Below, in pieces: positions 14,554-60,160 of a stretch of 64,000 nt of DNA. Origin of the DNA: Haliotis rubra (taxonomy: Eukaryota); assembly GCF_003918875.1 (NCBI RefSeq), contig NW_025766957.1, forward strand, positions 1,054,001-1,118,000, read 5' to 3'. A model generated the notes under the pieces. That model saw only the letters and a program-made list of their open reading frames with translations. It was not told the origin of the DNA and made no database searches. Made by a program: the position numbers and the translations under genes. The first letter of the stretch is position 1; the number at the start of each line of letters is the position of its first letter.

Positions 14554-14759
14554 GACCATATACCAACAAAATGCCACACTATCAAAAACTTGATCATCTT
14601 GTCAAAACTGAATGTTGCTAAAGCGAGGACCAGTCAAAAGGAGGAACCTAATCCCATCATCGCTGATTGGCGTGATGTAAAGAAAACGTGCTCAATTAGC
14701 TTGTAAAAGCCAAGATAAAATAATTTTGGACTTTCAAATAGATCAAAGAGTACTTCCAT

Positions 14760-14845
14760 CCAATAAGATTGAAGCTGATGAAGCCAGAGAAGTGAGAAGA
14801 CTATATAACTCTCTAGATGGAAAGTGAGCACATCTCACTCTTTGA
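14760..14845 (+). promoter_or_regulatory. Core promoter of TALE copy 1 (CCAAT, TATA, conserved start-site element)
   Basis: CCAAT at 14760, TATATAA at 14802, TGAGCACATCTCACTC at 14825-14840. The layout recurs in every unit and, inverted, at 18523-18601. Confidence 0.65.
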
Positions 14846-14905
14846 GTCTGTTGATACATAGTTACACTAAAACCTATTAGCAAGTGAACTGTGCTCAAAT
14901 ACAGG

Positions 14906-16196
14906 ATGGCTGACTTTGTAACTCCTGTTGATGGTGCCTTTGACGTCAGTTCCGGTATCGGTAAGTCCTTCCAGATAGTAATCTAGCATCCATTTGTAAG
15001 TGTGATCTCTCCATCGCAAATGCTTCAAATTCCCAGTGCCCTTGGCAAATCCATATCGTACCATTGATTACCTTGAATATTCATTTACAGAATACGTTAT
15101 TTTCTTTATTGTAGGAGCTCCTCAGCACACATCAACTCCTCTCCCCAAGAGACGTGCAGTGCCATCCCTGACAATACCAGTGCCTGACACAAACCATCAT
15201 GTGCCAACTCTCTCCAGCCTCCACCCGATGTCATCCCCGTCCTACCTCCACCCAACATGCATCTCCAGTCCCTACAGCTTCTTCCCTTCCTATTCTGCCA
15301 TGTACTACTCTCCCAGCTTCGGACCAGGTACCTGCACAGCTCCCAGCTATCCGCTACTACCGAGTCCATCATTCCTGCCACCAAGTCCATCCTACCTTTC
15401 ATCCCACCCGTTGGGGTATTCGACTGTACCAGGGAGTCCATCCTTCCTACCGGGTACGATTCCAAGCTCAAGTCTGCCCATCAAACCAGTATCGATTCCA
15501 ACCACCAGTGCTCTGACTACACCAACGCAGGGGCATTCAAAGTCTGTGGACATCAGCCCAGTCACAGAGACACGCCCGATTGACTTCGAATTGCCGTCTT
15601 GTTCCAGGCCCGATATTGGTAAAGCTGTTGATGACATCGTAGCGAAAACCCTTGGGGCAGATCTGGCAACAAAGAGTACCAACAACGACCGCCAGTCAGC
15701 TCTTGAGAAGAGACTCCAGTCACTCAAGTCAAGGTTCCCAACAGAGGTAAAGGAACTATCCAGCTTCCTTGCCTTCCATTCCTCATCTATTCAGAAGGAA
15801 CATCAACAGTGTCTACAAGATGGATTCTTCCCAACGGACTATCACAATTGGTTGACCACAAGATACAATGATCAACTGCACCTGGTGTTCACAAGCATCG
15901 AGAAAAGTGTGACCACCCTCGAGAACCAAGGCAAGATACTGGCCCGTCCTGCCAGCAGAAACCTCAGTCCTGAATCAATCGTCTTGATGGAGAAGTGGTA
16001 CCATGAACATCTCAACAACCCCTACCCCACTCAAACAGAAGCTGAAGACATGGCCAACAAGGGGGGAATTACCCTTTCTCAAGTACGAAAGTGGTTTTCC
16101 AACAAAAGACACAGGACCAGGAAACCCAGATCTGTCAAAGCTGTAGTTGCTGCCAAACAGTGTGAAGAGTTCCTGTCTGGGATATTTCAGATGTAA
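14906..16196 (+). CDS. Divergent TALE-class homeodomain protein (spiralian TALE/SPILE-like), copy 1, 378 aa, 2 exons
   Basis: Exon 1 14906-14960 (MADFVTPVDGAFDVSSGI, donor GTAAGT) and exon 2 15115-16196, with a phase-1 intron. Contains a Pro/Ser-rich region, a helical region (ALEKRLQSLKSRFPTEVKEL...IEKSVTTLEN) and the homeodomain LMEKWYHEHLNNPYPT...QVRKWFSNKRHR. AATAAA at 16413 and 16426. Confidence 0.9.
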
Positions 16197-17077
16197 AATG
16201 GGAACAGTTCTGTCACCTGAGTGATGCTAACTCGTTTAAGTAGTTTTGAAAGTGATATCAACTATGAATGTCTGTCCGAAGACAAAATTCCTTCATGCAT
16301 AGTGCTATATTCATCTTAGGACCTGTGATATCCATTGTTTTGTATATATGAATGTAAATTATGACCCGTGCTATCCATGGTTTTGTGGATGTCAATTGTT
16401 GCTTTGATCTGAAATAAAATATTGTAATAAACTATCATTCAAATGCCCGTCTTTTTAGCACGCACAGACTCTGTATTAACTCATCCTAAACATTAGCACA
16501 GAAGCGACTTCCTCACCAACATACACTCAATACAACTATCACACATTCCACATTACCATGAAACACCGAACACACTCAACATCCCTGTTTACACAACCAA
16601 CATAATGTAATATTATTATCACAACGGGATCAGTCAGTGTTACTTCCACACATTCATGTACAAAGTATTCAACATGCCATATTAACTATTACATCAAATA
16701 TATCACGCATTTAATAGTATTGTCAAAGTGCGATGGAGTGCACTTCACATTTAACTAGATCATTTTAATTTTTGCACCAAGCATCGTCTCTAACATTATA
16801 CTATAGTGTGCTCACACAAATTAAACGTTCATGACAACAATGCCACGTAACACTAAAAATGTATGCACAGTCTGGCCTGAAGGCTGCATTAGCAACACAT
16901 ATTTTGGCAAACTTAACCAGCTCCTTTTCTCGTTACAGAACGCTGAACACAACAGTCCCAGTTCCGTACCAGTTGTCACCTACTTGTAAATATCTGTGCA
17001 CGCAGTCGGTAACTCGCATCCTACCCTTAAACTATTTCACAACCACATCCACCCTAAAATAACATTTCAAGCCACAA

Positions 17078-17281
17078 GAAGACCACACCCGTGAAGATCC
17101 GGCTTAGAACTGGTGTATATCCAATCGTTCTTGTCGTTAGAGGCGACTAACGGGATCGGGTGGTCAGGCTCGCTGACTTGGTTGGCACATGTCATCCTCT
17201 CCCAATAGCGTAGATCGATGCTCATGATGTCGATCACTGGGTTTTCTGGTTCACACTCCATTATTTACATATAGCTGGAAA
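17078..17281 (+). mobile_element. SINE copy amplified with the macrosatellite unit
   Basis: ACCCGTGAAGATC...GTCGTTAGAGGCGACTAACGGGATCGGGTGGTCAGG, repeated at ~21781, 26486, 31192 and 35899. Mostly deleted after copy 6 (~40550). Confidence 0.85.
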
Positions 17282-18044
17282 TTTAACAACAACGAAACCA
17301 AACAAACACAAGAAGATCAGCATTGTATGTGATGATCATTATACCCCTGCCGAGGCCTAGTTGGATTATTGTAACAGTTGCTGAGAGGGGAATATTACAG
17401 TCACTGTCTATAAATCCATAATCACTGCTTTTGTATTATGATGTTACTTTTGATTTTGTGATGCCACATTGATATGTTTCTGGAGATTTGTATTGATTTG
17501 TAAAAACAGTTAATTTTAGAATATTAATTACATCACATTTCTTGGTTGTTGTCCTTTTGGTTTCACACTTAGTTATTTTACCAAGTAATTGCTGGTTAAT
17601 TTTTGTTTCAAATTTGGAATGAAGAATATAGGTAGATATCTCTCTTCAAAGCATCAGGACCATTTAATTTCTACAAATATATTCTCTCCAAACTACGAAA
17701 ATAGATTGGTAGGCATGTTTATATCACGTCGACTGCTGAATACAACAAAATTCCACATGGCAAGCTAGATATGTAGGAGTGTAAATTACTCAATCCATTT
17801 ACTTAATTGAAAATCTGCCATTTCCTTTAATTTGATATGAACTTTGGAAAGGATTTCAATCTCGTGACTCCTGTTTCGTTTGAATGTTAGGTCATGCAAA
17901 CTGGACAAATCAATGCTAGGATTCCATCAGTTTATTTAACGACGCAAAAGCACAAATGGTACAATTTCAAAACATGTTAAATAAACAACAAATAATAACA
18001 GGGATGGCACAATCCGATGCACTCATGTATGGGACAACAAACTG

Positions 18045-18449
18045 TCAAAGACTGACATCACAAACTGCAAATAACAAACATCCCTTTGGAAGAGACTTGG
18101 CACATTTTAGCAACGTTCGGGGAGATGAGTCAATATAGGCAGAGCCATGGTGCGGGTCTTGTTGGTTGGAGAGTGCTGGGTATCTCTGGACCAATGGAGT
18201 GGAGGTGTGCCGGGGAGTTCCTGAAACAAGAAAGGCGGTGTTAGAACATTCAGAGCGTTGTAGGATATTGTTAATGAAAGAATTTAGAATTACCACAACG
18301 TTTGTTACTTAATTAACCTGCAAATGTACTTCGTTTCTACCCAGCTTACCTAACGACAGAAGATTTCCCGGGCCCAGCAAGATGTTTCCTGGTGAAGATT
18401 GGGAGGTAGCAGTAGCAGCCTCACGGCATGGATGAGTATAGCAGGCCAT
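18045..18449 (-). CDS. Short spliced homeodomain-less paralog of the TALE gene (91 aa; may be a pseudogene), copy A
   Basis: Exon 1 18449-18350 (MACYTHPCREAATATSQSSPGNILLGPGNLLSL, donor GTAAGC) and exon 2 18220-18045 (acceptor TTGTTTCAG; GTPRHTSTPLVQRYPALS...DVSL*). Phase-1 intron as in the TALE gene. Minus-strand AATAAA at 17936-17931. Confidence 0.6.
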
Positions 18450-18522
18450 TTGTACTTGCTGAATCGCAGATGGATGTAAAACAGACTCCTTGTTAATGGT
18501 TCTGGGTAGCAGGAGACTCAAC

Positions 18523-18601
18523 GAGTGAGATGTGCTCAGTTCAATCAGTAGAGCTTTATATGCTACTCAGGTGTTTGACATCATCACCTTTGATTTATTG
18601 G
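18523..18601 (-). promoter_or_regulatory. Inverted homolog of the TALE core promoter, upstream of the short paralog
   Basis: Minus strand reads CCAAT (18601), TATAAA (18561) and TGAGCACATCTCACTC (18538-18523). The last is identical to 14825-14840. Confidence 0.65.
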
Positions 18602-19606
18602 CTGGAGATTCTCCTTAATCACTGGCTTCTATTTTCATTCTTTGATCTGTGGTTTCACTGGCTTGTGCTTTCAAGTGTTCTACAAACAGTACCAATTGAT
18701 TATTCTTCTCCACACTATGAAGCCAGTCAGCAGATTTGAATTCAGATTTGAGCCTTCGAGTGAAGGCGGATTAACGATGTTGTTTTAATGAACCATAGGT
18801 TAAAATGCATAATCTTCACCTGAAGCTGCTGATACCATTTAGATAGGTATATTATATTATATGTTCTGCTGCTATTCAAGTCCATTAGTAACCTAATTCT
18901 ATATGACAAAGTAAACTATGTAAGAACCTTTCAAATCTGAAAGAAATGGGAAACTAACTGGTAAACTTATCAGCTTGTATTGCGGCAGAAGCAAATCAAA
19001 TCGATCATTCTAAAATTTGGAAAAGACAATCGAGAAAACCCATTCAACAGATCAGTTTCCAGCAGAGAAAATCAAAGACAAATAAATCAATCGGAAAAGC
19101 CAGTCAATCGATTATGGTTGATTAACGCTATCAAACTCTAGCCAGTGAGGCCAGAGATGAAAGAGACCGTAACCAATCAAACACAAAGCGAGGTCCGTAT
19201 TAAAGAAGCCAGAGATCACCGAGAAACCTGAAACAACCTATCAATCACTTGTGATCGTACAAGGCCACATTATCAAAACTTGATCATCTTGTGTCATCAC
19301 TGAATGTTGCCAAAGCACGGACCAGTCAAAAGGCCAAACCTAATGCCATCATGCAGATTGAGGTTGTGTTGTACAGAAAACGTGCTCAATTAGCTTGTGA
19401 AAGCCAAGATCAAAGAATGTTAGCTTTTAAATAGAAGTCATTGATCAAAGACTACTTCCATCCAATAAGATTGAAGCTGGTGAAGCCAGAGAGTGAGGAG
19501 AGTATATATATCTCCAGATAGAAGGTGAGCACATCTCACGCTTTGAGTCTGTTGATACATAGTTACACGAGAACCTATTAGCAAGTGAACTGTGCTCAAA
19601 TACAGG

Positions 19607-20897
19607 ATGGCTGACTTTGTAACTCCTGTTGATGGTGCCTTTGACGTCAGTTCCGGTATCGGTAAGTCCTTCCAGATAGTAATCTAGCATCCATTTGTAA
19701 GTGTGATCTCTCCATCGCAAATGCTTCAAATTCCCAGTGCCCTTGGCAAATCCATATCGTACCATTGATTACCTTGAATATTCATTTACAGAATACGTTA
19801 TTTTCTTTATTGTAGGAGCTCCTCAGCACACATCAACTCCTCTCCCCAAGAGACGTGCAGTGCCATCCCTGACAATACCAGTGCCTGACACAAACCATCA
19901 TGTGCCAACTCTCTCCAGCCTCCACCCGATGTCATCCCCGTCCTACCTCCACCCAACATGCATCTCCAGTCCCTACAGCTTCTTCCCTTCCTATTCTGCC
20001 ATGTACTACTCTCCCAGCTTCGGACCAGGTACCTGCACAGCTCCCAGCTATCCGCTACTACCGAGTCCATCATTCCTGCCACCAAGTCCATCCTACCTTT
20101 CATCCCACCCGTTGGGGTATTCGACTGTACCAGGGAGTCCATCCTTCCTACCGGGTACGATTCCAAGCTCAAGTCTGCCCATCAAACCAGTATCGATTCC
20201 AACCACCAGTGCTCTGACTACACCAACGCAGGGGCATTCAAAGTCTGTGGACATCAGCCCAGTCACAGAGACACGCCCGATTGACTTCGAATTGCCGTCT
20301 TGTTCCAGGCCCGATATTGGTAAAGCTGTTGATGACATCGTAGCGAAAACCCTTGGGGCAGATCTGGCAACAAAGAGTACCAACAACGACCGCCAGTCAG
20401 CTCTTGAGAAGAGACTCCAGTCACTCAAGTCAAGGTTCCCAACAGAGGTAAAGGAACTATCCAGCTTCCTTGCCTTCCATTCCTCATCTATTCAGAAGGA
20501 ACATCAACAGTGTCTACAAGATGGATTCTTCCCAACGGACTATCACAATTGGTTGACCACAAGATACAATGATCAACTGCACCTGGTGTTCACAAGCATC
20601 GAGAAAAGTGTGACCACCCTCGAGAACCAAGGCAAGATACTGGCCCGTCCTGCCAGCAGAAACCTCAGTCCTGAATCAATCGTCTTGATGGAGAAGTGGT
20701 ACCATGAACATCTCAACAACCCCTACCCCACTCAAACAGAAGCTGAAGACATGGCCAACAAGGGGGGAATTACCCTTTCTCAAGTACGAAAGTGGTTTTC
20801 CAACAAAAGACACAGGACCAGGAAACCCAGATCTGTCAAAGCTGTAGTTGCTGCCAAACAGTGTGAAGAGTTCCTGTCTGGGATATTTCAGATGTAA
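19607..20897 (+). CDS. TALE homeodomain protein, copy 2
   Basis: Exons 19607-19661 and 19816-20897. Protein identical to copy 1. Confidence 0.9.
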
Positions 20898-22747
20898 AAT
20901 GGGAACAGTTCTGTCACCTGAGTGATGCTAACGCGTTTAAGTAGTTGTGAAAGTGATATCAACTATGAATGTCTGTCCGAAGACAAAATTCCTTCATGCA
21001 TAGTGCTATATTCATCTTAGGATCTGTGATATCCATTGTTTTGTATATATGAATGTAAATTATGACCCGTGCTATCCATGGTTTTGTGGATGTCAATTGT
21101 TGCTTTGATCTGAAATAAAATATTGTAATAAACTATCATTCAAATGCCCGTCTTTTTTAGCACGCACAGACTCTGTATTAACTCATCCTAAACATTAGCA
21201 CAGAAGCGACTTCCTCACCAACATACACTCAATACAACTATCACACATTCCACATTACCATGAAACACCGAACACACTCAACATCCCTGTTTACACAACC
21301 AACATAATGTAATATTATTATCACAACGGGATCAGTCAGTGTTACTTCCACACATTCATGTACAAAGTATTCAACATGCCATATTAACTATTACATCAAA
21401 TATATCACGCATTTAATAGTATTGTCAAAGTGCGATGGAGTGCACTTCACATTTAACTAGATCATTTTAATTTTTTGCACCAAGCATCGTCTCTAACATT
21501 ATACTATAGTGTGCTCACACAAATTTAAACGTTCATGACAACAATGCCACGTAACACTAAAAATGTATGCACAGTCTGGCCTGAAGGCTGCATTAGCAAC
21601 ACATATTTTGGCAAACTTAACCAGCTCCTTTTCTCGTTACAGAACGCTGAACACAACAGTCCCAGTTCCGTACCAGTTGTCACCTACTTGTAAATATCTG
21701 TGCACGCAGTCGGTAACTCGCATCCTACCCTTAAACTATTTCACAACCACATCCACCCTAAAATAACATTTCAAGCCACAAGAAGACCACACCCGTGAAG
21801 ATCGGGCTTAGAACTGGTGTATATCCAATCGTTCTTGTCGTTAGAGGCGACTAACGGGATCGGGTGGTCAGGCTCGCTGACTTGGTTGGCACATGTCATC
21901 CTCCCAAATAGCGTAGATCGATGCTCATGATGTCGATCACTGGGTTTTCTGGTTCACACTCCATTATTTACATATAGCTGGAAATTTAACAACAACGAAA
22001 CCAAACAAACACAAGAAGATCAGCATTGTATGTGATGATCATTATACCCTGCCGAGGCCTAGTTGGATTATTGTAACAGTTGCTGAGAGGGGAATATTAC
22101 CGTCACTGTCTATAAATCCATAATCACTGCTTTTGTATTATGATGTTACTTTTGATTTTGTGATGCCACATTGATATGTTTCTGGAGATTTGTATTGATT
22201 TGTAAAAACAGTTAATTTTAGAATATTAATTACATCACATTTCTTGGTTGTTGTCCTTTTGGTTTCACACTTAGTTATTTTACCAAGTAATTGCTGGTTA
22301 ATTTTTTGTTTCAAATTTGGAATGAAGAATATAGGTAGATATCTCTCTTCAAAGCATCAGGACCATTTAATTTCTACAAATATATTCTCTCCAAACTACG
22401 AAAATAGATTGGTAGGCATGTTTATATCACGTCGACTGCTGAATACAACAAAATTCCACATGGCAAGCTAGATATGTAGGAGTGTAAATTACTCAATCCA
22501 TTTACTTAATTGAAAATCTGCCATTTCCTTTAATTTGATATGAACTTTGGAAAGGATTTCAATCTCGTGACTCCTGTTTCGTTTGAATGTTAGGTCATGC
22601 AAACTGGACAAATCAATGCTAGGATTCCATCAGTTTATTTAACGACGCAAAAGCACAAATGGTACAATTTCAAAACATGTTAAATAAACAACAAATAATA
22701 ACAGGGATGGCACAATCCGATGCACTCATGTATGGGACAACAAACTG

Positions 22748-23152
22748 TCAAAGACTGACATCACAAACTGCAAATAACAAACATCCCTTTGGAAGAGACT
22801 TGGCACATTTTAGCAACGTTCGGGGAGATGAGTCAATATAGGCAGAGCCATGGTGCGGGTCTTGTTGGCTGGAGAGTGCTGGGTATCTCTGGACCAATGG
22901 AGTGGAGGTGTGCCGGGGAGTTCCTGAAACAAGAAAGGCGGTGTTAGAACATTCAGAGCGTTGTAGGATATTGTTAATGAAAGAATTTAGAATTACCACA
23001 ACGTTTGTTACTTAATTAACCTGCAAATGTACTTCGTTTCTACCCAGCTTACCTAACGACAGAAGATTTCCCGGGCCCAGCAAGATGTTTCCTGGTGAAG
23101 ATTGGGAGGTAGCAGTAGCAGCCTCACGGCATGGATGAGTATAGCAGGCCAT
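22748..23152 (-). CDS. Short homeodomain-less paralog, copy B
   Basis: Same two-exon structure as 18045-18449. Confidence 0.55.
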
Positions 23153-24309
23153 TTGTACTTGCTGAATCGCAGATGGATGTAAAACAGACTCCTTGTTAAT
23201 GGTTCTGGGTAGCAGGAGACTCAACGAGTGAGATGTGCTCAGTTCAATCAGTAGAGCTTTATATGCTACTCAGGTGTTTGACATCATCACCTTTGATTTA
23301 TTGGCTGGAGATTCTCCTTAATCACTGGCTTCTATTTTCATTCTTTGATCTGTGGTTTCACTGGCTAGTGCTTTCAAGTGTTCTACAAACAGTACCAATT
23401 GACTATTCTTCTCCACACTATGAAGCCAGTCAGCAGATTTGAATTCAGATTTGAGCCTTCGAGTGAAGGCGGATTAACGGTGTTGTTTTAATGAACCATA
23501 GGTTAAAATGCATAATCTTCACCTGAAGCTGCTGATACCATTTAGGTAGGTATATTATATTATATGTTTTGCTGCTATTCAAGTCCATTAGTAACCTAAT
23601 TCTATATGACAAAGTAAACTATGTAAGAACCTTTCAAATCTGAAAGAAATGGGAAACTAACTGGTAAACTTATCAGCTTGTATTGCGGCAGAAGCAAATC
23701 AAATCGATCATTCTAAAATTTGGAAAAGACAATGGAGAAAACCCATTCAACAGATCAGTTTCCAGCAGAGAAAATCAAAGACAAATAAATCAATCGGAAA
23801 AGCCAGTCAATCGATTATGGTTGATTAACGCTATCAAACACTAGCCAGTGAGGCCAGAGATGAAAGAGACCGTAACCAATCAAACACAAAGCGAGGTCCG
23901 TATTAAAGAAGCCAGAGATCACCGAGAAACCTGAAACAACCTATCAATCACTTGTGATCGTACAAGGCCACACTATCAAAACTTGATCATCTTGTGTCAT
24001 CACTGAATGTTGCCAAAGCACGGACCAGTCAAAAGGCCAAACCTAATGCCATCATGCAGATTGAGGTTGTGTTGTACAGAAAACGTGCTCAATTAGCTTG
24101 TGAAAGCCAAGATCAAAGAATGTTAGCTTTTAAATCGAAGTCATTGATCAAAGACTACTTCCATCCAATAAGATTGAAGCTGGTGAAGCCAGAGAGTGAG
24201 GAGAGTATATATATCTCCAGATAGAAGGTGAGCACATCTCACGCTTTGAGTCTGTTGATACATAGTTACACGAGAACCTATTAGCAAGTGAACTGTGCTC
24301 AAATACAGG

Positions 24310-25600
24310 ATGGCTGACTTTGTAACTCCTGTTGATGGTGCCTTTGACGTCAGTTCCGGTATCGGTAAGTCCTTCCAGATAGTAATCTAGCATCCATTTG
24401 TAAGTGTGATCTCTCCATCGCAAATGCTTCAAATTCCCAGTGCCCTTGGCAAATCCATATCGTACCATTGATTACCTTGAATATTCATTTACAGAATACG
24501 TTATTTTCTTTATTGTAGGAGCTCCTCAGCACACATCAACTCCTCTCCCCAAGAGACGTGCAGTGCCATCCCTGACAATACCAGTGCCTGACACAAACCA
24601 TCATGTGCCAACTCTCTCCAGCCTCCACCCGATGTCATCCCCGTCCTACCTCCACCCAACATGCATCTCCAGTCCCTACAGCTTCTTCCCTTCCTATTCT
24701 GCCATGTACTACTCTCCCAGCTTCGGACCAGGTACCTGCACAGCTCCCAGCTATCCGCTACTACCGAGTCCATCATTCCTGCCACCAAGTCCATCCTACC
24801 TTTCATCCCACCCGTTGGGGTATTCGACTGTACCAGGGAGTCCATCCTTCCTACCGGGTACGATTCCAAGCTCAAGTCTGCCCATCAAACCAGTATCGAT
24901 TCCAACCACCAGTGCTCTGACTACACCAACGCAGGGGCATTCAAAGTCTGTGGACATCAGCCCAGTCACAGAGACACGCCCGATTGACTTCGAATTGCCG
25001 TCTTGTTCCAGGCCCGATATTGGTAAAGCTGTTGATGACATCGTAGCGAAAACCCTTGGGGCAGATCTGGCAACAAAGAGTACCAACAACGACCGCCAGT
25101 CAGCTCTTGAGAAGAGACTCCAGTCACTCAAGTCAAGGTTCCCAACAGAGGTAAAGGAACTATCCAGCTTCCTTGCCTTCCATTCCTCATCTATTCAGAA
25201 GGAACATCAACAGTGTCTACAAGATGGATTCTTCCCAACGGACTATCACAATTGGTTGACCACAAGATACAATGATCAACTGCACCTGGTGTTCACAAGC
25301 ATCGAGAAAAGTGTGACCACCCTCGAGAACCAAGGCAAGATACTGGCCCGTCCTGCCAGCAGAAACCTCAGTCCTGAATCAATCGTCGTGATGGAGAAGT
25401 GGTACCACGAACATCTCAACAACCCCTACCCCACTCAAACAGAAGCTGAAGACATGGCCAACAAGGGGGGAATTACCCTTTCTCAAGTACGAAAGTGGTT
25501 TTCCAACAAAAGACACAGGACCAGGAAACCCAGATCTGTCAAAGCTGTAGTTGCTGCCAAACAGTGTGAAGAGTTCCTGTCTGGGATATTTCAGATGTAA
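24310..25600 (+). CDS. TALE homeodomain protein, copy 3
   Basis: Exons 24310-24364 and 24519-25600. One L>V change in helix 1 (ESIVVMEK). Confidence 0.9.
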
Positions 25601-27450
25601 AATGGGAACAGTTCTGTCACCTGAGTGATGCTAACGCGTTTAAGTAGTTGTGAAAGTGATATCAACTATGAATGTCTGTCCGAAGACAAAATTCCTTCAT
25701 GCATAGTGCTATATTCATCTTAGGATCTGTGATATCCATTGTTTTGTATATATGAATGTAAATTATGACCCGTGCTATCCATAGTTTTGTGGATGTGAAT
25801 TGTTGATTTGATCTGAAATAAAATATTGTAATAAACTATCATTCAAATGCCCGTCTTTTTTTAGCACGCACAGACTCTGTATTAACTCATCCTAAACATT
25901 AGCACAGAAGCGACTTCCTCACCAACATACACTCAATACAACTATCACACATTCCACATTACCATGAAACACCGAACACACTCAACATCCCTGTTTACAC
26001 AACCAACATAATGTAATATTATTATCACAACGGGATCAGTCAGTGTTACTTCCACACATTCATGTACAAAGTATTCAACATGCCATATTAACTATTACAT
26101 CAAATATATCACGCATTTAATAGTATTGTCAAAGTGCGATGGAGTGCACTTCACATTTAACTAGATCATTTTAATTTTTTGGCACCAAGCATCGTCTCTA
26201 ACATTATACTATAGTGTGCTCACACAAATTTAACGTTCATGACAACAATGCCACGTAACACTAAAAATGTATGCACAGTCTGGCCTGAAGGCTGCATTAG
26301 CAACACATATTTTGGCAAACTTAACCAGCTCCTTTTCTCGTTACAGAACGCTGAACACAACAGTCCCAGTTCCGTACCAGTTGTCACCTACTTGTAAATA
26401 TCTGTGCACGCAGTCGGTAACTCGCATCCTACCCTTAAACTATTTCACAACCACATCCACCCTAAAATAACATTTCAAGCCACAAGAAGACCACACCCGT
26501 GAAGATCGGGCTTAGAACTGGTGTATATCCAATCGTTCTTGTCGTTAGAGGCGACTAACGGGATCGGGTGGTCAGGCTCGCTGACTTGGTTGGCACATGT
26601 CATCCTCTCCCAATAGCGTAGATCGATGCTCATGATGTCGATCACTGGGTTTTCTGGTTCACACTCCATTATTTACATATAGCTGGAAATTTAACAACAA
26701 CGAAACCAAACAAATACAAGAAGATCAGCATTGTATGTGATGATCATTATACCCTGCCGAGGCCTAGTTGGAGTATTGTAACAGTTGCTGAGAGGGGAAT
26801 ATTACCGTCACTGTCTATAAATCCATAATCACTGCTTTTGTATTATGATGTTACTTTTGATTTTGTGATGCCACATTGATATGTTTCTGGAGATTTGTAT
26901 TGATTTGTAAAACAGTTAATTTTAGAATATTAATTACATCACATTTCTTGGTTGTTGTCCTTTTGGTTTCACACTTAGTTATTTTACCAAGTAATTGCTG
27001 GTTAATTTTTGTTTCAAATTTGGAATGAAGAATATAGGTAGATATCTTTCTTCAAAGCATCAGGACCATTTAATTTCAACAAATATATTCTCTCCAAACT
27101 ACGAAAATAGATTGGTAGGCATGTTTATATCACGTCGACTGCTGAATACAACAAAATTCCACATGGCAAGCTAGATATGTAGGAGTGTAAATTACTCAAT
27201 CCATTTACCTAATTGAAAATCTTCCATTTCCTTTAATTTGATATGAACTTTGGAAAGGATTTCAATCTCGTGACTCCTGTTTCGTTTGAATGTTAGGTCA
27301 TGCAAACTGGACAAATCAATGCTAGGATTCCATCAGTTTATTTAACGACGCAAAAGCACAAATGGTACAATTTCAAAACATGTTAAATAAACAACAAATA
27401 ATAACAGGGATGGCACAATCCGATGCACTCATGTATGGGACAACAAACTG

Positions 27451-27855
27451 TCAAAGACTGACATCACAAACTGCAAATAACAAACATCCCTTTGGAAGAG
27501 ACTTGGCACATTTTAGCAACGTTCGGGGAGATGAGTCAATATAGGCAGAGCCATGGTGCGGGTCTTGTTGGCTGGAGAGTGCTGGGTATCTCTGGACCAA
27601 TGGAGTGGAGGTGTGCCGGGGAGTTCCTGAAACAAGAAAGGCGGTGTTAGAACATTCAGAGCGTTGTAGGATATTGTTAATGAAAGAATTTAGAATTACC
27701 ACAACGTTTGTTACTTAATTAACCTGCAAATGTACTTCGTTTCTACCCAGCTTACCTAACGACAGAAGATTTCCCGGGCCCAGCAAGATGTTTCCTGGTG
27801 AAGATTGGGAGGTAGCAGTAGCAGCCTCACGGCATGGATGAGTATAGCAGGCCAT
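27451..27855 (-). CDS. Short homeodomain-less paralog, copy C
   Basis: Same two-exon structure as 18045-18449. Confidence 0.55.
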
Positions 27856-29016
27856 TTGTACTTGCTGAATCGCAGATGGATGTAAAACAGACTCCTTGTT
27901 AATGGTTCTGGGTAGCAGGAGACTCAACGAGTGAGATGTGCTCAGTTCAATCAGTAGAGCTTTATATGCTACTCAGGTGTTTGACATCATCACCTTTGAT
28001 TTATTGGCTGGAGATTCTCCTTAATCACTGGCTTCTATTTTCATTCTTTGATCTGTGGTTTCACTGGCTAGTGCTTTCAAGTGTTCTACAAACAGTACCA
28101 ATTGACTATTCTTCTCCACACTATGAAGCCAGTCAGCAGATTTGAATTCAGATTTGAGCCTTCGAGTGAAGGCGGATTAACGGTGTTGTTTTAATGAACC
28201 ATAGGTTAAAATGCATAATCTTCACCTGAAGCTGCTGATACCATTTAGGTAGGTATATTATATTATATGTTTTGCTGCTATTCAAGTCCATTAGTAACCT
28301 AATTCTATATGACAAAGTAAACTATGTAAGAACCTTTCAAATCTGAAAGAAATGGGAAACTAACTGGTAAACTTATCAGCTTGTATTGCGGCAGAAGCAA
28401 ATCAAATCGATCATTCTACAATTTGGAAAAGACAATGGAGAAAACCCATTCAACAGATCAGTTTCCAGCAGAGAAAATCAAAGACAAATAAATCAATCGG
28501 AAAAGCCAGTCAATCGATTATGGTTGATTAACGCTATCAAACACTAGCCAGTGAGGCCAGAGATGAAAGAGACCGTAACCAATCAAACACAAAGCGAGGT
28601 CCGTATTAAAGAAGCCAGAGATCACCGAGAAACCTGAAACAACCTATCAATCACTTGTGATCGTACAAGGCCACACTATCAAAACTTGATCATCTTGTGT
28701 CATCACTGAATGTTGCCAAAGCACGGACCAATCAAAAGGCCAAACCTAATGCCATCATGCAGATTGAGGTTGTGTTGTACAGAAAACGTGCTCAATTAGC
28801 TTGTGAAAGCCAAGATCAAAGAATGTTAGCTTTTAAATCGAAGTCATTGATCAAAGACTACTTCCATCCAATAAGATTGAAGCTGGTGAAGCCAGAGAGT
28901 GAGAAGAGAGTAGTATATATATCTCCAGATGAAGGTGAGCACATCTCACGCTTTGAGTCTGTTGATACATAGTTACACGAGAACCTATTAGCAAGTGAAC
29001 TGTGCTCAAATACAGG

Positions 29017-30307
29017 ATGGCTGACTTTGTAACTCCTGTTGATGGTGCCTTTGACGTCAGTTCCGGTATCGGTAAGTCCTTCCAGATAGTAATCTAGCAT
29101 CCATTTGTAAGTGTGATCTCTCCATCGCAAATGCTTCAAATTCCCAGTGCCCTTGGCAAATCCATATCGTACCATTGATTACCTTGAATATTCATTTACA
29201 GAATACGTTATTTTCTTTATTGTAGGAGCTCCTCAGCACACATCAACTCCTCTCCCCAAGAGACGTGCAGTGCCATCCCTGACAATACCAGTGCCTGACA
29301 CAAACCATCATGTGCCAACTCTCTCCAGCCTCCACCCGATGTCATCCCCGTCCTACCTCCACCCAACATGCATCTCCAGTCCCTACAGCTTCTTCCCTTC
29401 CTATTCTGCCATGTACTACTCTCCCAGCTTCGGACCAGGTACCTGCACAGCTCCCAGCTATCCGCTACTACCGAGTCCATCATTCCTGCCACCAAGTCCA
29501 TCCTACCTTTCATCCCACCCGTTGGGGTATTCGACTGTACCAGGGAGTCCATCCTTCCTACCGGGTACGATTCCAAGCTCAAGTCTGCCCATCAAACCAG
29601 TATCGATTCCAACCACCAGTGCTCTGACTACACCAACGCAGGGGCATTCAAAGTCTGTGGACATCAGCCCAGTCACAGAGACACGCCCGATTGACTTCGA
29701 ATTGCCGTCTTGTTCCAGGCCCGATATTGGTAAAGCTGTTGATGACATCGTAGCGAAAACCCTTGGGGCAGATCTGGCAACAAAGAGTACCAACAACGAC
29801 CGCCAGTCAGCTCTTGAGAAGAGACTCCAGTCACTCAAGTCAAGGTTCCCAACAGAGGTAAAGGAACTATCCAGCTTCCTTGCCTTCCATTCCTCATCTA
29901 TTCAGAAGGAACATCAACAGTGTCTACAAGATGGATTCTTCCCAACGGACTATCACAATTGGTTGACCACAAGATACAATGATCAACTGCACCTGGTGTT
30001 CACAAGCATCGAGAAAAGTGTGACCACCCTCGAGAACCAAGGCAAGATACTGGCCCGTCCTGCCAGCAGAAACCTCAGTCCTGAATCAATCGTCTTGATG
30101 GAGAAGTGGTACCATGAACATCTCAACAACCCCTACCCCACTCAAACAGAAGCTGAAGACATGGCCAACAAGGGGGGAATTACCCTTTCTCAAGTACGAA
30201 AGTGGTTTTCCAACAAAAGACACAGGACCAGGAAACCCAGATCTGTCAAAGCTGTAGTTGCTGCCAAACAGTGTGAAGAGTTCCTGTCTGGGATATTTCA
30301 GATGTAA
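29017..30307 (+). CDS. TALE homeodomain protein, copy 4
   Basis: Exons 29017-29071 and 29226-30307. Protein identical to copy 1. Confidence 0.9.
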
Positions 30308-32162
30308 AATGGGAACAGTTCTGTCACCTGAGTGATGCTAACGCGTTTAAGTAGTTGTGAAAGTGATATCAACTATGAATGTCTGTCCGAAGACAAAATT
30401 CCTTCATGCATAGTGCTATATTCATCTTAGGATCTGTGATATCCATTGTTTTGTATATATGAATGTAAATTATGACCCGTGCTATCCATGGTTTTGTGGA
30501 TGTCAATTGTTGATTTGATCTGAAATAAAATATTGTAATAAACTATCATTCAAATGCCCGTCTTTTTTAGCACGCACAGACTCTGTATTAACTCATCCTA
30601 AACATTAGCACAGAAGCGACTTCCTCACCAACATACACTCAATACAACTATCACACATTCCACATTACCATGAAACACCGAACACACTCAACATCCCTGT
30701 TTACACAACCAACATAATGTAATATTATTATCACAACGGGATCAGTCAGTGTTACTTCCACACATTCATGTACAAAGTATTCAACATGCCATATTAACTA
30801 TTACATCAAATATATCACGCATTTAATAGTATTGTCAAAGTGCGATGGAGTGCACTTCACATTTAACTAGATCATTTTAATTTTTTTGCACCAAGCATCG
30901 TCTCTAACATTATACTATAGTGTGCTCACACAAATTTAACGTTCATGACAACAATGCCACGTAACACTAAAAATGTATGCACAGTCTGGCCTGAAGGCTG
31001 CATTAGCAACACATATTTTGGCAAACTTAACCAGCTCCTTTTCTCGTTACAGAACGCTGAACACAACAGTCCCAGTTCCGTACCAGTTGTCACCTACTTG
31101 TAAATATCTGTGCACGCAGTCGGTAACTCGCATCCTACCCTTAAACTATTTCACAACCACATCCACCCTAAAATAACATTTCAAGCCACAAGAAGACCAC
31201 ACCCGTGAAGATCGGGCTTAGAACTGGTGTATATCCAATCGTTCTTGTCGTTAGAGGCGACTAACGGGATCGGGTGGTCAGGCTCGCTGACTTGACTTGG
31301 TTGGCACATGTCATCCTCTCCCAATAGCGTAGATCGATGCTCATGATGTCGATCACTGGGTTTTCTGGTTCACACTCCATTATTTACATATAGCTGGAAA
31401 TTTAACAACAACGAAACCAAACAAACACAAGAAGATCAGCATTGTATGTGATGATCATTATACCCTGCCGAGGCCTAGTTGGATTATTGTAACAGTTGCT
31501 GAGAGGGGAATATTACCGTCACTGTCTATAAATCCATAATCACTGCTTTTGTATTATGATGTTACTTTTGATTTTGTGATGCCACATTGATATGTTTCTG
31601 GAGATTTGTATTGATTTGTAAAACAGTTAATTTTAGAATATTAATTACATCACATTTCTTGGTTGTTGTCCTTTGGTTTCACACTTAGTTATTTTACCAA
31701 GTAATTGCTGGTTAATTTTTGTTTCAAATTTGGAATGAAGAATATAGGTAGATATCTCTCTTCAAAGCATCAGGACCATTTAATTTCAACAAATATATTC
31801 TCCAAACTACGAAAATAGATTGGTAGGCATGTTTATATCACGTCGACTGCTGAATACAACAAAATTCCACATGGCAAGCTAGATATGTAGGAGTGTAAAT
31901 TACTCAATCCATTTACCTAATTGAAAATCTTCCATTTCCTTTAATTTGATATGAACTTTGGAAAGGATTTCAATCTCGTGACTCCTGTTTCGTTTGAATG
32001 CTAGGTCATGCAAACTGGACAAATCAATGCTAGGATTCCATCAGTTTATTTAACGACGCAAAAGCACAAATGGTACAATTTCAAAACATGTTAAATAAAC
32101 AACAAATAATAACAGGGATGGCACAATCCGATGCACTCATGTATGTATGGGACAACAAACTG

Positions 32163-32566
32163 TCAAAGACTGACATCACAAACTGCAAATAACAAACATC
32201 CCTTTGGAAGAGACTTGGCACATTTTAGCAACGTTCGGGGAGATGAGTCAATATAGGCAGAGCCATGGTGCGGGTCTTGTTGGCTGGAGAGTGCTGGGTA
32301 TCTCTGGACCAATGGAGTGGAGGTGTGCCGGGGAGTTCCTGAAACAAGAAAGGCGGTGTTAGAACATTCAGAGCGTTGTAGGATATTGTTAATGAAAGAA
32401 TTTAGAATTACCACAACGTTTGTTACTTAATTAACCTGCAAATGTACTTCGTTTCTACCCAGCTTACCTAACGACAGAAGATTTCCGGGCCCAGCAAGAT
32501 GTTTCCTGGTGAAGATTGGGAGGTAGCAGTAGCAGCCTCACGGCATGGATGAGTATAGCAGGCCAT
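32163..32566 (-). pseudogene. Short homeodomain-less paralog, copy D, 1-nt deletion in exon 1
   Basis: ATTTCCGGG at ~32481 versus ATTTCCCGGG in the other copies. This is a homopolymer indel and may be an error. Confidence 0.5.
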
Positions 32567-33724
32567 TTGTACTTGCTGAATCGCAGATGGATGTAAAACA
32601 GACTCCCTTGTTAATGGTTCTGGGTAGCAGGAGACTCAACGAGTGAGATGTGCTCAGTTCAATCAGTAGAGCTTTATATGCTACTCAGGTGTTTGACATC
32701 ATCACCTTTGATTTATTGGCTGGAGATTCTCCTTAATCACTGGCTTCTATTTTCATTCTTTGATCTGTGGTTTCACTGGCTAGTGCTTTCAAGTGTTCTA
32801 CAAACAGTACCAATTGACTATTCTTCTCCACACTATGAAGCCAGTCAGCAGATTTGAATTCAGATTTGAGCCTTCGAGTGAAGGCGGATTAACGGTGTTG
32901 TTTTAATGAACCATAGGTTAAAATGCATAATCTTCACCTGAAGCTGCTGATACCATTTAGGTAGGTATATTATATTATATGTTTTGCTGCTATTCAAGTC
33001 CATTAGTAACCTAATTCTATATGACAAAGTAAACTATGTAAGAACCTTTCAAATCTGAAAGAAATGGGAAACTAACTGGTAAACTTATCAGCTTGTATTG
33101 CGGCAGAAGCAAATCAAATCGATCATTCTAAAATTTGGAAAAGACAATGGAGAAAACCCATTCAACAGATCAGTTTCCAGCAGAGAAAATCAAAGACAAA
33201 TAAATCAATCGGAAAAGCCAGTCAATCGATTATGGTTGATTAACGCTATCAAACACTAGCCAGTGAGGCCAGAGATGAAAGAGACCGTAACCAATCAAAC
33301 ACAAAGCGAGGTCCGTATTAAAGAAGCCAGAGATCACCGAGAAACCTGAAACAACCTATCAATCACTTGTGATCGTACAAGGCCACACTATCAAAACTTG
33401 ATCATCTTGTGTCATCACTGAATGTTGCCAAAGCACGGACCAGTCAAAAGGCCAAACCTAATGCCATCATGCAGATTGAGGTTGTGTTGTACAGAAAACG
33501 TGCTCAATTAGCTTGTGAAAGCCAAGATCAAAGAATGTTAGCTTTTAAATCGAAGTCATTGATCAAAGACTACTTCCATCCAATAAGATTGAAGCTGGTG
33601 AAGCCAGAGAGTGAGGAGAGTATATATATCTCCAGATAGAAGGTGAGCACATCTCACGCTTTGAGTCTGTTGATACATAGTTACACGAGAACCTATTAGC
33701 AAGTGAACTGTGCTCAAATACAGG

Positions 33725-35016
33725 ATGGCTGACTTTGTAACTCCTGTTGATGGTGCCTTTGACGTCAGTTCCGGTATCGGTAAGTCCTTCCAGATAGTAA
33801 TCTAGCATCCATTTGTAAGTGTGATCTCTCCATCGCAAATGCTTCAAATTCCCAGTGCCCTTGGCAAATCCATATCGTACCATTGATTACCTTGAATATT
33901 CATTTACAGAATACGTTATTTTCTTTATTGTAGGAGCTCCTCAGCACACATCAACTCCTCTCCCCAAGAGACGTGCAGTGCCATCCCTGACAATACCAGT
34001 GCCTGACACAAACCATCATGTGCCAACTCTCTCCAGCCTCCACCCGATGTCATCCCCGTCCTACCTCCACCCAACATGCATCTCCAGTCCCTACAGCTTC
34101 TTCCCTTCCTATTCTGCCATGTACTACTCTCCCAGCTTCGGACCAGGTACCTGCACAGCTCCCAGCTATCCGCTACTACCGAGTCCATCATTCCTGCCAC
34201 CAAGTCCATCCTACCTTTCATCCCACCCGTTGGGGTATTCGACTGTACCAGGGAGTCCATCCTTCCTACCGGGTACGATTCCAAGCTCAAGTCTGCCCAT
34301 CAAACCAGTATCGATTCCAACCACCAGTGCTCTGACTACACCAACGCAGGGGCATTCAAAGTCTGTGGACATCAGCCCAGTCACAGAGACACGCCCGATT
34401 GACTTCGAATTGCCGTCTTGTTCCAGGCCCGATATTGGTAAAGCTGTTGATGACATCGTAGCGAAAACCCTTGGGGCAGATCTGGCAACAAAGAGTACCA
34501 ACAACGACCGCCAGTCAGCTCTTGAGAAGAGACTCCAGTCACTCAAGTCAAGGTTCCCAACAGAGGTAAAGGAACTATCCAGCTTCCTTGCCTTCCATTC
34601 CTCATCTATTCAGAAGGAACATCAACAGTGTCTACAAGATGGATTCTTCCCAACGGACTATCACAATTGGTTGACCACAAGATACAATGATCAACTGCAC
34701 CTGGTGTTCACAAGCATCGAGAAAAGTGTGACCACCCTCGAGAACCAAGGCAAGATACTGGCCCGTCCTGCCAGCAGAAACCTCAGTCCTGAATCAGTCG
34801 TCTTGATGGAGAAGTGGTACCATGAACATCTCAACAACCCCTACCCCACTCAAACAGAAGCTGAAGACATGGCCAACAAGGGGGGCAATTACCCTTTCTC
34901 AAGTACGAAAGTGGTTTTCCAACAAAAGACACAGGACCAGGAAACCCAGATCTGTCAAAGCTGTAGTTGCTGCCAAACAGTGTGAAGAGTTCCTGTCTGG
35001 GATATTTCAGATGTAA
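33725..35016 (+). pseudogene. TALE homeodomain gene copy 5, +1 frameshift before helix 3 (pseudogene or assembly error)
   Basis: Exons 33725-33779 and 33934-35016. AAGGGGGGCAATT at ~34878-34890 has one extra base, moving WFSNKR to another frame (ORF 34822-35016). Confidence 0.7.
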
Positions 35017-36865: not shown

Positions 36866-37270
36866 TCAAAGACTGACATCACAAACTGCAAATAACAAAC
36901 ATCCCTTTGGAAGAGACTTGGCACATTTTAGCAACGTTCGGGGAGATGAGTCAATATAGGCAGAGCCATGGTGCGGGTCTTGTTGGCTTGAGAGTGCTGG
37001 GTATCTCTGGACCAATGGAGTGGAGGTGTGCCGGGGAGTTCCTGAAACAAGAAAGGCGGTGTTAGAACATTCAGAGCGTTGTAGGATATTGTTAATGAAA
37101 GAATTTAGAATTACCACAACGTTTGTTACTTAATTAACCTGCAAATGTACTTCGTTTCTACCCAGCTTACCTAACGACAGAAGATTTCCCGGGCCCAGCA
37201 AGATGTTTCCTGGTGAAGATTGGGAGGTAGCAGTAGCAGCCTCACGGCATGGATGAGTATAGCAGGCCAT
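36866..37270 (-). CDS. Short homeodomain-less paralog, copy E
   Basis: Same two-exon structure, intact frame. Confidence 0.55.
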
Positions 37271-41401: not shown

Positions 41402-41530
41402 GGGAGATGTATTACAGAAAATACCAGATTACTTTATGATTTAATGAATCATTGTAAAGTTAATAAGATATCTGGCCTATTAGTCACCGTTGACTTCGAG
41501 AAAGCGTTTGATACCATTGAATGGGATTCA
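41402..41530 (+). mobile_element. L1/Tx1-clade LINE reverse transcriptase fragment at the right edge of the array
   Basis: Translates as GRCITENTRLLYDLMNHCKVNKISGLLVTVDFEKAFDTIEWD, matching the L1/Tx1 RT pattern GRxIxxNxR...DFEKAFDxxxW. Confidence 0.8.

Positions 41531-46984: not shown

Positions 46985-60160
<13,176 letters not shown>

What the first reader, a model, noticed from the sequence alone, without database searches (positions are those of the whole stretch)
17931..18601. Hidden head-to-head, homeodomain-less paralog in every unit: candidate microProtein partner of the TALE factor
Seen: two ORF-track fragments on the minus strand splice (GTAAGC...TTTCAG, phase 1) into a 91-aa ORF. 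It mirrors the TALE gene in CCAAT-to-TATA spacing (40 vs 42 nt), an identical 16-mer TGAGCACATCTCACTC, the intron phase, an exon-2 start GTPRHTSTPLVQR (vs GAPQHTSTPLPKR) and a U-rich 3' region with AATAAA. It lacks the helical domain and the homeodomain. The frame is intact in 4 of 5 copies. Inference: a co-amplified factor plus truncated-partner cassette, where the short product could titrate partners of the HTSTP motif. Alternatively it is a recently disabled paralog riding in the unit.
Basis: partly seen in the sequence, partly recalled or inferred. Interest (0 to 1): 0.82.

Follow-up and report, generated by a model that had tools for sequence, protein, structure and literature searches.

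The report
Truncated TALE-derived mini-gene in abalone array
Each unit of a tandemly repeated abalone homeobox gene carries, head-to-head, a small two-exon gene copied from the front end of a sister homeobox gene; it has stayed largely intact in several abalone species, but nothing yet shows that it is expressed or that it regulates its neighbour.

Summary
The window is Haliotis rubra. A 4.7-kb unit repeated from 14570 to 41409 carries six TALE homeobox genes (+) and five complete copies of a minus-strand mini-gene. That mini-gene has a TALE-type promoter, a first-AUG 91-codon ORF, a GTAAGC..TTTCAG phase-1 intron and AATAAA. Four of the five copies are open.

It is a chimera. The promoter, 5'UTR, start codon, intron acceptor and first ~14 codons of exon 2 are homologous to TALE genes. 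They group with the 'B' paralogue, which is full-length in H. rufescens and H. cracherodii, not with the neighbouring 'A' gene. The last ~45 codons and the 3'UTR match nothing.

It is also old. The ORF is open in 6 of 10 H. asinina copies, in a third abalone contig and in a ~4%-diverged DNA sample. North Pacific abalones keep only a promoter-less, frameshifted relic.

Evidence for selection is mixed:
- Exon 2 plus 3'UTR diverge at about half the intergenic rate.
- Fixed coding indels are in frame.
- Amino-acid constraint is weak (17 synonymous : 30 non-synonymous, not significant).

No RNA data could be reached. The peptide keeps only an HTSTPL motif and no folded or interaction domain, so the microProtein reading is unsupported. 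The scan noted the array on this same window before, not on other DNA.

The parts
14570..41409 (.). Tandem array with a 4703-bp unit: six TALE-A genes (+), five complete mini-genes (-) and one partial mini-gene at the distal end.
   Evidence: Self-BLAST of the unit and tblastn of both products. A 'goes back 4601' joint in independent DNA contigs confirms the tandem order.
18531..18665 (-). Mini-gene core promoter: GATCAAAG (TCF/LEF-like) at 18647-18640, CCAAT at 18601, TATAAA at 18560.
   Evidence: The blocks are shared with TALE-A and TALE-B promoters of four species. Spacing comes and the GATCAAAG count. TATA is kept in H. asinina and L005; CCAAT is not kept in H. asinina.
18450..18538 (-). 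Putative 5'UTR starting in the conserved 14-mer TGAGCACATCTCAC (TSS inferred near 18531). It contains no upstream ATG.
   Evidence: The 5'UTR is 91% identical to the TALE-B 5'UTR of H. cracherodii.
18350..18449 (-). Exon 1 coding part (100 nt, 33 codons plus 1 nt), followed by the GTAAGC donor.
   Evidence: The start codon aligns with the TALE start codon.
18221..18349 (-). Intron, GTAAGC..TTTCAG, phase 1.
   Evidence: Donor and acceptor are kept in H. asinina and L005.
18045..18220 (-). Exon 2 coding part (57 codons: G|TPRHTSTPLVQR... to ...CDVSL) plus the stop TGA at 18047-18045.
   Evidence: Only the first ~45 nt are homologous to TALE exon 2.
17915..18044 (-). 3'UTR with AATAAA at 17936-17931. 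The poly(A) site near 17915 is inferred.
   Evidence: p-distance to H. asinina is 0.091, against about 0.20 for intergenic DNA.
22634..23368 (-). Mini-gene copy 2, ORF intact (ATG 23152).
27337..28071 (-). Mini-gene copy 3, ORF intact (ATG 27855).
32048..32782 (-). Mini-gene copy 4 (ATG 32566), frameshifted by a 1-nt deletion in exon 1. The same unit carries the one frameshifted TALE gene.
36752..37486 (-). Mini-gene copy 5, ORF intact (ATG 37270). Its distal promoter is diverged.
40891..41409 (-). Partial sixth copy (3'UTR and most of exon 2) at the distal array boundary.
19391..21140 (+). Neighbouring TALE-A gene: promoter 19391-19525, ATG 19607, intron 19662-19814, stop at 20897, AATAAA region near 21115-21135. 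It encodes 378 aa with a Homeobox_KN domain.
   Evidence: 100% identical to H. rubra LOC124281872.

Best explanation
The feature is an old chimeric mini-gene, not a chance ORF and not a freshly broken copy.

Origin. Its 5' module was copied from a TALE homeobox gene of the 'B' paralogue lineage. That module is about 490 bp: promoter, 5'UTR, start codon, exon 1, intron acceptor and the first ~14 codons of exon 2. It is joined to an unrelated ~250-bp tail that supplies about 45 codons, a stop and a poly(A) signal. The gene existed before the sampled abalone lineages split. In the H. rubra / H. asinina group it became part of the repeat unit of the TALE-A array and is copied along with it. In red and black abalone it lost its promoter and exon 1 and decayed.

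Likely operation. These steps are inferred, not shown. The mini-gene keeps the promoter grammar shared by the TALE genes, so it is probably switched on together with them. For related spiralian TALE genes that is the early cleavage embryo. It would give a spliced, polyadenylated RNA of about 0.5 kb whose first AUG opens a 91-95-aa, largely unstructured peptide.

Its only link to the TALE proteins is the N-terminal HTSTPL (Ser/Thr-Pro) motif. If it acts on the TALE pathway, it would compete for whatever binds or modifies that motif. It could not poison dimerisation or DNA binding.

Rough odds: transcribed about 0.65; peptide functional about 0.35-0.4; acts on TALE through motif competition about 0.1-0.15.
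For: - Gene model and 91-aa ORF.
- Inverted homology to the TALE 5' region in every unit, E 8e-14.
- Promoter plus 5'UTR tree puts the mini-genes with H. rufescens TALE-B (support 100/99) against all TALE-A promoters. The 5'UTR is 91% identical to H. cracherodii TALE-B.
- The tail has no similarity to TALE exon 2 or 3'UTR (z about 1).
- Orthologous copies in H. asinina (84% nt) and Logan contig L005 (82%) keep TATA, first-AUG start, no uATG, donor, acceptor, the same stop and AATAAA.
- Open frames: 4/5 H. rubra, 6/10 H. asinina, L005, DNA sample X1-X3.
- All three coding indels found among the frame-intact copies (two between species, one shared by two H. asinina copies) are multiples of 3, while non-coding indels mostly are not.
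- No stop arose in 47 inferred substitutions (neutral P = 0.14).
- Exon 2 plus 3'UTR diverge at 0.092 / 0.116, against 0.20 / 0.18 for intergenic DNA of the same unit (Fisher p = 3e-6 / 0.006), with ten-fold fewer gap columns.
- Where the promoter is gone, the relic is frameshifted and has lost its donor.
Against: - No RNA evidence at all. No RNA run holds the stretch, and the only runs laid were DNA contigs.
- No predicted protein anywhere resembles the peptide, so no annotation pipeline has called it in any Haliotis genome.
- Amino-acid constraint is weak: 17 synonymous against 30 non-synonymous changes, where 12.8: 32.2 is expected neutrally (p = 0.16), with no third-position excess.
- The 3'UTR is as conserved as the coding part, so the conservation need not be about the protein.
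- CCAAT is not kept in H. asinina.
- 4 of 10 H. asinina copies share a 4-nt frameshift, while the TALE genes in those units are intact.
- The gene was dispensable in the North Pacific lineage.
Confidence: 0.42

Rival explanations
1. Passive relic. The mini-gene is a non-functional partial duplicate that merely rides in the repeat unit. Its open frame and signals persist because the array is homogenised (few independent lineages), the ORF is short and stop-poor, and too little time has passed.
For: - The syn:nonsyn ratio is not distinguishable from neutral, and there is no third-position excess.
- P(no stop) by chance is 0.14.
- Frameshifted copies occur in both species: 1/5 and 4/10.
- The gene decayed in H. 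rufescens and H. cracherodii.
- It is never annotated, and there is no RNA evidence.
Against: - Exon 2 plus 3'UTR evolve at about half the intergenic rate of the same unit, with far fewer indels.
- Every coding indel found in frame-intact copies is in frame.
- Start, first-AUG status, splice sites, stop and AATAAA are all kept in three lineages at 12-15% divergence.
- Broken copies are no more frequent than for the TALE gene in H. rubra (1/6, in the same unit).
Confidence: 0.28
2. Non-coding function. What is selected is the DNA or RNA, not the peptide. The unit could be a second TALE-type promoter that competes for, or buffers, the same transcription factors (for example TCF/LEF-like GATCAAAG sites) and shapes TALE-A firing. 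Alternatively it could be a short polyadenylated RNA whose conserved 3' part carries regulatory elements.
For: - Conservation is equal in the 3'UTR (0.09) and the exon 2 CDS (0.09), with no codon-position pattern.
- A 43-nt promoter block around GATCAAAG is identical between H. rubra and H. asinina and is shared with the TALE promoters.
- The 3' block is still recognisable in the North Pacific relic.
Against: - No conserved RNA secondary structure: the consensus fold is only -9.3 kcal/mol and its covariation term is unfavourable (+1.44).
- No Rfam family matches.
- This reading does not explain in-frame-only fixed indels or the absence of stops.
- A promoter-decoy role does not need the exon 2 / 3'UTR block.
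Confidence: 0.2
3. Classical microProtein. The peptide binds the TALE factor or its obligate partner through a retained interaction domain and sequesters it.
For: - Small size (9.6 kDa).
- Descent from a TALE gene.
- Loss of the homeodomain.
- Co-amplification and a shared promoter grammar.
- The HTSTPL motif is invariant in the mini-gene of three species and in TALE-A/B.
Against: - No interaction domain is retained. Homology ends about 14 residues into exon 2.
- No Pfam match.
- AlphaFold2 of the exon-2 peptide gives pLDDT 55 and pTM 0.19.
- The PKRR stretch that follows the motif in TALE is lost.
- Weak amino-acid constraint.
Confidence: 0.08

Closest known systems
Spiralian-specific TALE (SPILE) gene arrays of molluscs: near-identical tandem copies in Lottia, a chiton and Haliotis discus hannai (PMC8524836)
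   Same: The neighbour is a lineage-restricted TALE homeobox gene in a near-identical tandem array. A/C- and B-clade SPILE genes start zygotic expression at the 4-16-cell stage, which is the basis for the inferred timing.
   Different: Those reports describe only homeodomain-bearing copies. A conserved head-to-head, homeodomain-less derivative inside each unit is not mentioned there. SPILE clade membership of this TALE gene was not tested here.
Plant microProteins such as KNATM, a KNOX/TALE relative without a homeodomain (reviews PMC9638782, PMC5381583)
   Same: A small protein derived from a TALE transcription-factor gene that lacks the DNA-binding homeodomain.
   Different: KNATM-type microProteins keep the interaction domain (MEINOX) that lets them bind the parent family. 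This peptide keeps only about 14 residues around HTSTPL and no detectable domain.
Homeodomain-less isoform of Drosophila Homothorax (own knowledge, not checked in a paper here)
   Same: A TALE-family product without a homeodomain that works alongside the full-length factor.
   Different: It arises by alternative splicing of the same gene and retains the Exd-binding HM domain. Here the product comes from a separate gene with its own promoter and an orphan tail.
Chimeric young genes formed by partial duplication and fusion to unrelated sequence (general class, own knowledge)
   Same: A duplicated promoter and 5' exons are joined to non-homologous DNA that provides a new C-terminus and poly(A) signal. 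The product evolves fast, is lineage-restricted and is lost in some lineages.
   Different: This one sits inside a macrosatellite unit, so it is amplified 5-10-fold together with a paralogue of its parent.
D4Z4/DUX4-type homeobox macrosatellite (comparison raised by the scan's note s1-352084)
   Same: A homeobox gene embedded in each unit of a kilobase-scale tandem array.
   Different: D4Z4 units are not known to carry a second, divergently oriented truncated paralogue (own knowledge).

Membership tests
microProtein (miP) | Small protein (<20 kDa), per PMC9638782 | tested here: met
   91 aa, 9.6 kDa.
microProtein (miP) | Evolutionarily related to a larger multi-domain regulator | tested here: met
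   The 5' module is homologous to TALE genes (E 8e-14; alignments) and groups with TALE-B.
microProtein (miP) | Consists of, or retains, the protein-protein interaction domain of the parent | tested here: not met
   Homology stops about 14 codons into exon 2. No Pfam domain. AlphaFold2 pLDDT 55, pTM 0.19. Only the HTSTPL motif is shared.
microProtein (miP) | Engages the target in non-productive complexes | not testable with these tools
   Needs interaction and functional assays.
TALE-class homeobox gene | Homeodomain with the three-residue loop extension | tested here: not met
   No Homeobox_KN or Homeodomain hit for the 91-aa product, whereas the neighbour scores 1.6e-12. tblastn of the TALE protein finds no homeodomain remnant downstream of the mini-gene.
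Unprocessed pseudogene / dead partial duplicate | Disabling mutations in the reading frame or signals | tested here: inconclusive
   Open in 4/5, 6/10, 1/1 and 1/1 copies. Frameshift alleles exist in both species, and the North Pacific copy is clearly dead.
Unprocessed pseudogene / dead partial duplicate | Neutral rate and pattern of substitution | tested here: inconclusive
   The syn:nonsyn ratio of 17:30 is not different from neutral. Exon 2 plus 3'UTR diverge at half the intergenic rate (p = 3e-6).
Expressed protein-coding gene | Spliced transcript and translation product observed | not testable with these tools
   No RNA run was offered. The one read-laying run returned DNA contigs only.

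The most novel reading that the evidence does not exclude
A macrosatellite that amplifies a developmental transcription factor together with its own short antagonist. The mini-gene, driven by the same promoter grammar, makes a peptide in the cleavage-stage embryo. That peptide competes for the kinase or partner recognising the invariant N-terminal HTSTPL motif of the TALE factors, so factor and modulator stay in fixed dosage because they are copied as one cassette.
Probability: 0.1. Interest if true: 0.7.

Novelty: new member of a known kind. Interest (0 to 1): 0.4.

Why it matters
Lineage-specific TALE (SPILE-type) arrays are thought to specify blastomere fates in spiralian embryos. How their dosage and activity are controlled is unknown.

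A conserved second transcription unit with the same promoter grammar inside each repeat unit is a concrete, testable candidate for such control, whether it works as a peptide, an RNA or a competing promoter.

Even if it is inert, it is a dated example of how a partial duplicate of one paralogue was captured into another paralogue's repeat unit, then amplified in one clade and lost in another. It also shows that current abalone annotations miss it.

Tried and rejected
1. Internal-deletion hypothesis: the tail as the C-terminus and 3'UTR of a TALE gene. Local alignments of the tail against TALE-A and TALE-B exon 2 plus 3'UTR score no better than shuffles. Rejected.

2. Direct copy of the neighbouring TALE-A promoter. 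The tree and a diagnostic 5'UTR segment place the mini-gene with TALE-B. Rejected.

3. RNA evidence. The look-up of sequencing runs returned no RNA holder. The three runs laid are genomic DNA contigs about 4% diverged. They were useful only as another haplotype or species.

4. Protein relatives.
- The word search with the 91-aa product found nothing.
- The exhaustive profile search with the exon-2 peptide alignment gave two hits, P0023 and P0024. Both are internally repetitive proteins matched by several short stretches. I read them as repeat-driven chance hits.

5. Structured RNA. No Rfam hit. RNAalifold of the 3' block gives -9.3 kcal/mol with an unfavourable covariation term.

6. Protein fold. 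AlphaFold2 of the exon-2 peptide with a shallow 5-row alignment has low confidence. That is consistent with disorder but not proof.

7. The H. iris genome preprint was checked for TALE arrays and holds nothing relevant.

Full report
**What is in the sequence**

On the minus strand of 17915-18665 there is a complete-looking small transcription unit:
- A GATCAAAG motif at 18647-18640, CCAAT at 18601 and TATAAA at 18560.
- A 14-mer, TGAGCACATCTCAC, starting 22 nt after the TATA box (18538-18525).
- A 5'UTR of about 85 nt without any upstream ATG.
- ATG at 18449, and exon 1 ending at 18350 before GTAAGC.
- A 129-nt intron ending in a pyrimidine tract and TTTCAG.
- Exon 2 from 18220, a stop at 18047-18045 and AATAAA at 17936-17931.

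Spliced, it reads 91 codons.

Two details need correcting:
- CCAAT-to-TATA spacing is 41 nt in both genes.
- The 16-mer is exact only in the mini-genes and the first TALE copy. It is 15/16 in the other five TALE copies.

**Context**

The TALE protein of the window is 100% identical to Haliotis rubra LOC124281872, so this is blacklip abalone.

A 4703-bp unit is repeated from 14570 to 41409 at 96-99.5% identity. It holds:
- six TALE genes on the plus strand;
- five complete mini-genes on the minus strand;
- a sixth mini-gene copy cut inside exon 2 at the distal boundary.

Independent DNA contigs from another sample show the same tandem order (a 'goes back 4601' joint).

One mini-gene copy (ATG 32566) has a 1-nt deletion in exon 1. 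The TALE gene of the same unit has a 1-nt insertion in the homeodomain. That unit also carries several other small indels, some of them in short base runs. It is either a degenerating unit or less well polished.

**What it is derived from**

The mini-gene and its neighbour form an inverted partial duplication. Window 18506-18658 matches 19558-19397 at about 70% (E 8e-14).

Alignment shows where homology lies:
- It runs through the promoter blocks, the 14-mer, the 5'UTR and the start codon (MACYT.P against MADFVTP).
- It is lost in the rest of exon 1 and most of the intron.
- It resumes at the acceptor and the first ~14 codons of exon 2.

Beyond that the tail, about 45 codons plus the 3'UTR, matches nothing in TALE genes.

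The 5' module is not a copy of the neighbour. In a tree of promoter plus 5'UTR, the mini-genes of H. rubra and H. asinina group with the 'B' paralogue of H. rufescens (P0018). Support is 100/99 against all 'A' promoters of five genomes. The 5'UTR is 49/54 identical to that of H. cracherodii TALE-B (P0006).

The TALE-A query found no B-type protein for H. rubra or H. asinina, although it found B-type proteins at E 1e-152 in H. cracherodii. This suggests, but does not prove, that B is absent or unannotated in those two species.

**Other abalones**

H. asinina has the same arrangement, including a GHL10 gene upstream. I tiled 57 kb of its array from five overlapping loci without conflicts. It holds ten mini-gene copies:
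- Six have an open 94-95-aa frame; two of these carry an in-frame +3.
- Four adjacent copies share a 4-nt deletion at the end of exon 1, which shifts the frame.

A 4.2-kb Logan contig from another run (L005) differs by about 15% in its TALE protein and about 18% in its mini-gene DNA. It has an open 94-aa frame.

The DNA contigs of the coded sample X1-X3, about 4% diverged, give an open 92-aa frame with an in-frame +3.

In all of these, TATA, the first-AUG start, donor, acceptor, the same stop and AATAAA are kept. CCAAT is not kept in H. asinina.

In H. cracherodii and H. rufescens the A-array units lack the mini-gene. A relic lies about 4.6 kb upstream of TALE-B in the same orientation. It consists of the last 14 nt of exon 1, the intron, exon 2 and the 3'UTR. 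Its donor is mutated (GT to GA in H. cracherodii), it has no promoter or start, and the coding part of the H. rufescens copy is frameshifted.

The gene therefore predates the split of these lineages. It was kept and amplified in one clade and abandoned in the other.

**Is the frame under selection?**

I assigned changes to three lineages by majority rule. This gives 17 synonymous and 30 non-synonymous substitutions and no stop.

A neutral simulation with the same number and spectrum of changes expects 12.8: 32.2: 1.95. It gives P(no stop) = 0.14 and P(at least 17 synonymous) = 0.12-0.16. Pairwise dN/dS is 0.43-0.83 without a third-position excess. By itself that is not evidence for a constrained protein.

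Three other observations point away from pure neutrality:
- All three coding indels found among the frame-intact copies (two between species, one shared by two H. asinina copies) are multiples of three. Indels in the 5'UTR, intron and 3'UTR mostly are not.
- Exon 2 plus 3'UTR differ by 0.092 (H. asinina) and 0.116 (L005). Intergenic DNA of the same unit differs by 0.20 and 0.18 (Fisher p = 3e-6 and 0.006), with ten-fold fewer gap columns. This is similar to the non-homeodomain parts of the TALE coding region.
- The copy that lost its promoter has decayed.

The 3'UTR is as conserved as the coding part. The constraint may therefore lie on the RNA or DNA rather than the peptide. No conserved RNA fold or Rfam family was found.

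**The product**

The peptide is 9.6 kDa and rich in Leu, Ser, Pro, Ala and Thr. It has no Pfam domain.

It has no relative among 5.8 billion clustered proteins of similar length. A profile search of 1.84 billion representatives gave only two hits, both to internally repetitive proteins, which I read as chance.

AlphaFold2 on the exon-2 peptide gives pLDDT 55 and pTM 0.19, with one short helix.

The invariant parts across species are HTSTP near the exon junction and the C-terminal stretch around IDSSPRTLLKC..KSLP..C.LFA.CDVS. In TALE-A and TALE-B the motif reads GAP(Q/R)HTSTPLPKRR and is invariant. The mini-gene has lost the basic PKRR part.

**Expression**

Expression could not be tested. No RNA run was offered for the stretch, and the single read-laying run returned genomic contigs.

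That no annotation or ORF call anywhere contains the peptide is weak negative evidence. The TALE gene itself is also absent from transcript-derived entries. That fits embryo-restricted expression as described for SPILE genes (PMC8524836).

**Interpretation**

I commit to a conserved, TALE-B-derived chimeric mini-gene that is probably co-expressed with the array genes. It may encode a weakly constrained, disordered peptide (confidence 0.42).

The rivals are:
- a hitch-hiking relic (0.28);
- a non-coding role of the promoter or RNA (0.20);

The microProtein label fails its defining test. No interaction domain is retained. If the peptide touches the TALE pathway, it can only do so through the short Ser/Thr-Pro motif.

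**Limits**
- There are few independent lineages, and copies within an array are not independent.
- Intergenic alignments are gappy, so the 'neutral' rate is approximate.
- The species behind L005 and X1-X3 are unknown to me.
- Promoter function, the TSS and the poly(A) site are inferred from consensus elements only.

Noticed in passing
window 33725-35013 (TALE copy 5, unit 31717-36422): A 1-nt insertion in a G run of the homeodomain (equivalent to 20767) frameshifts this TALE copy to a 368-aa product without helix 3. The same unit also holds the only frameshifted mini-gene and several other small indels. It is either a degenerate unit or a polishing artefact.
   Followed up: partly
window 18640-18647, 19408-19415, 19443-19450 and the equivalents in every unit: GATCAAAG, which fits the TCF/LEF core (A/T)(A/T)CAAAG, occurs 20 times in the window against 3.3 expected. 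There is one copy in each mini-gene promoter and two in each TALE promoter, inside blocks conserved across four abalone species and both TALE paralogues. This points to Wnt/beta-catenin input as a lead.
   Followed up: partly
L003:5985-9931; also L002:~5700-5760 and L007:~9880-9935: In H. cracherodii the TALE-B promoter (L003:5805-5984) is separated from its 5'UTR (from 9932) by about 3.9 kb ending in an (AAGT)n run. The same (AAGT)n-GTGAGCACATC junction precedes the first A-type gene in H. cracherodii and H. rufescens. This suggests an insertion at the transcription start that was copied between genes.
   Followed up: no
window 21781-21972; also 12931-13070, 44894-45085, 45498-45916, 49564-49696, 52607-52745, 56400-56574: A dispersed SINE-like element sits inside each array unit. 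In the DNA runs its summed contig depth is thousands of times that of the flanks, so it is a very abundant family.
   Followed up: no
window 19549/19814, seen in runs X1-X3: A lower-depth contig (about 1/13 of the array depth) matches up to the TALE 5'UTR and resumes exactly at exon 2. It probably comes from a diverged paralogue in that sample, possibly a TALE-B-type gene. If that locus is single-copy, the depth ratio hints at roughly a dozen array units there.
   Followed up: no
window 14570-14900 (first TALE copy): The edge copy of the array is more diverged (97.9%) than the others. Its 5'UTR carries the mini-gene/B-type version of the 16-mer (TGAGCACATCTCACTC) rather than the version of the inner copies.
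   Followed up: partly
window 10198-10885 and 53758-55056: There are minisatellites of 34/102-bp and 33-bp periods (15 and 40 copies). The second gives long repetitive ORFs on the minus strand.
   Followed up: no
window 56993-58623: Overlapping ORFs look like retrotransposon remnants. They were not checked against a family library.
   Followed up: no
L004:1-5153 (H. asinina): A GHL10-domain gene lies upstream of the H. asinina array, as noted for the H. rubra window. The array is therefore syntenic between the two species.
   Followed up: partly
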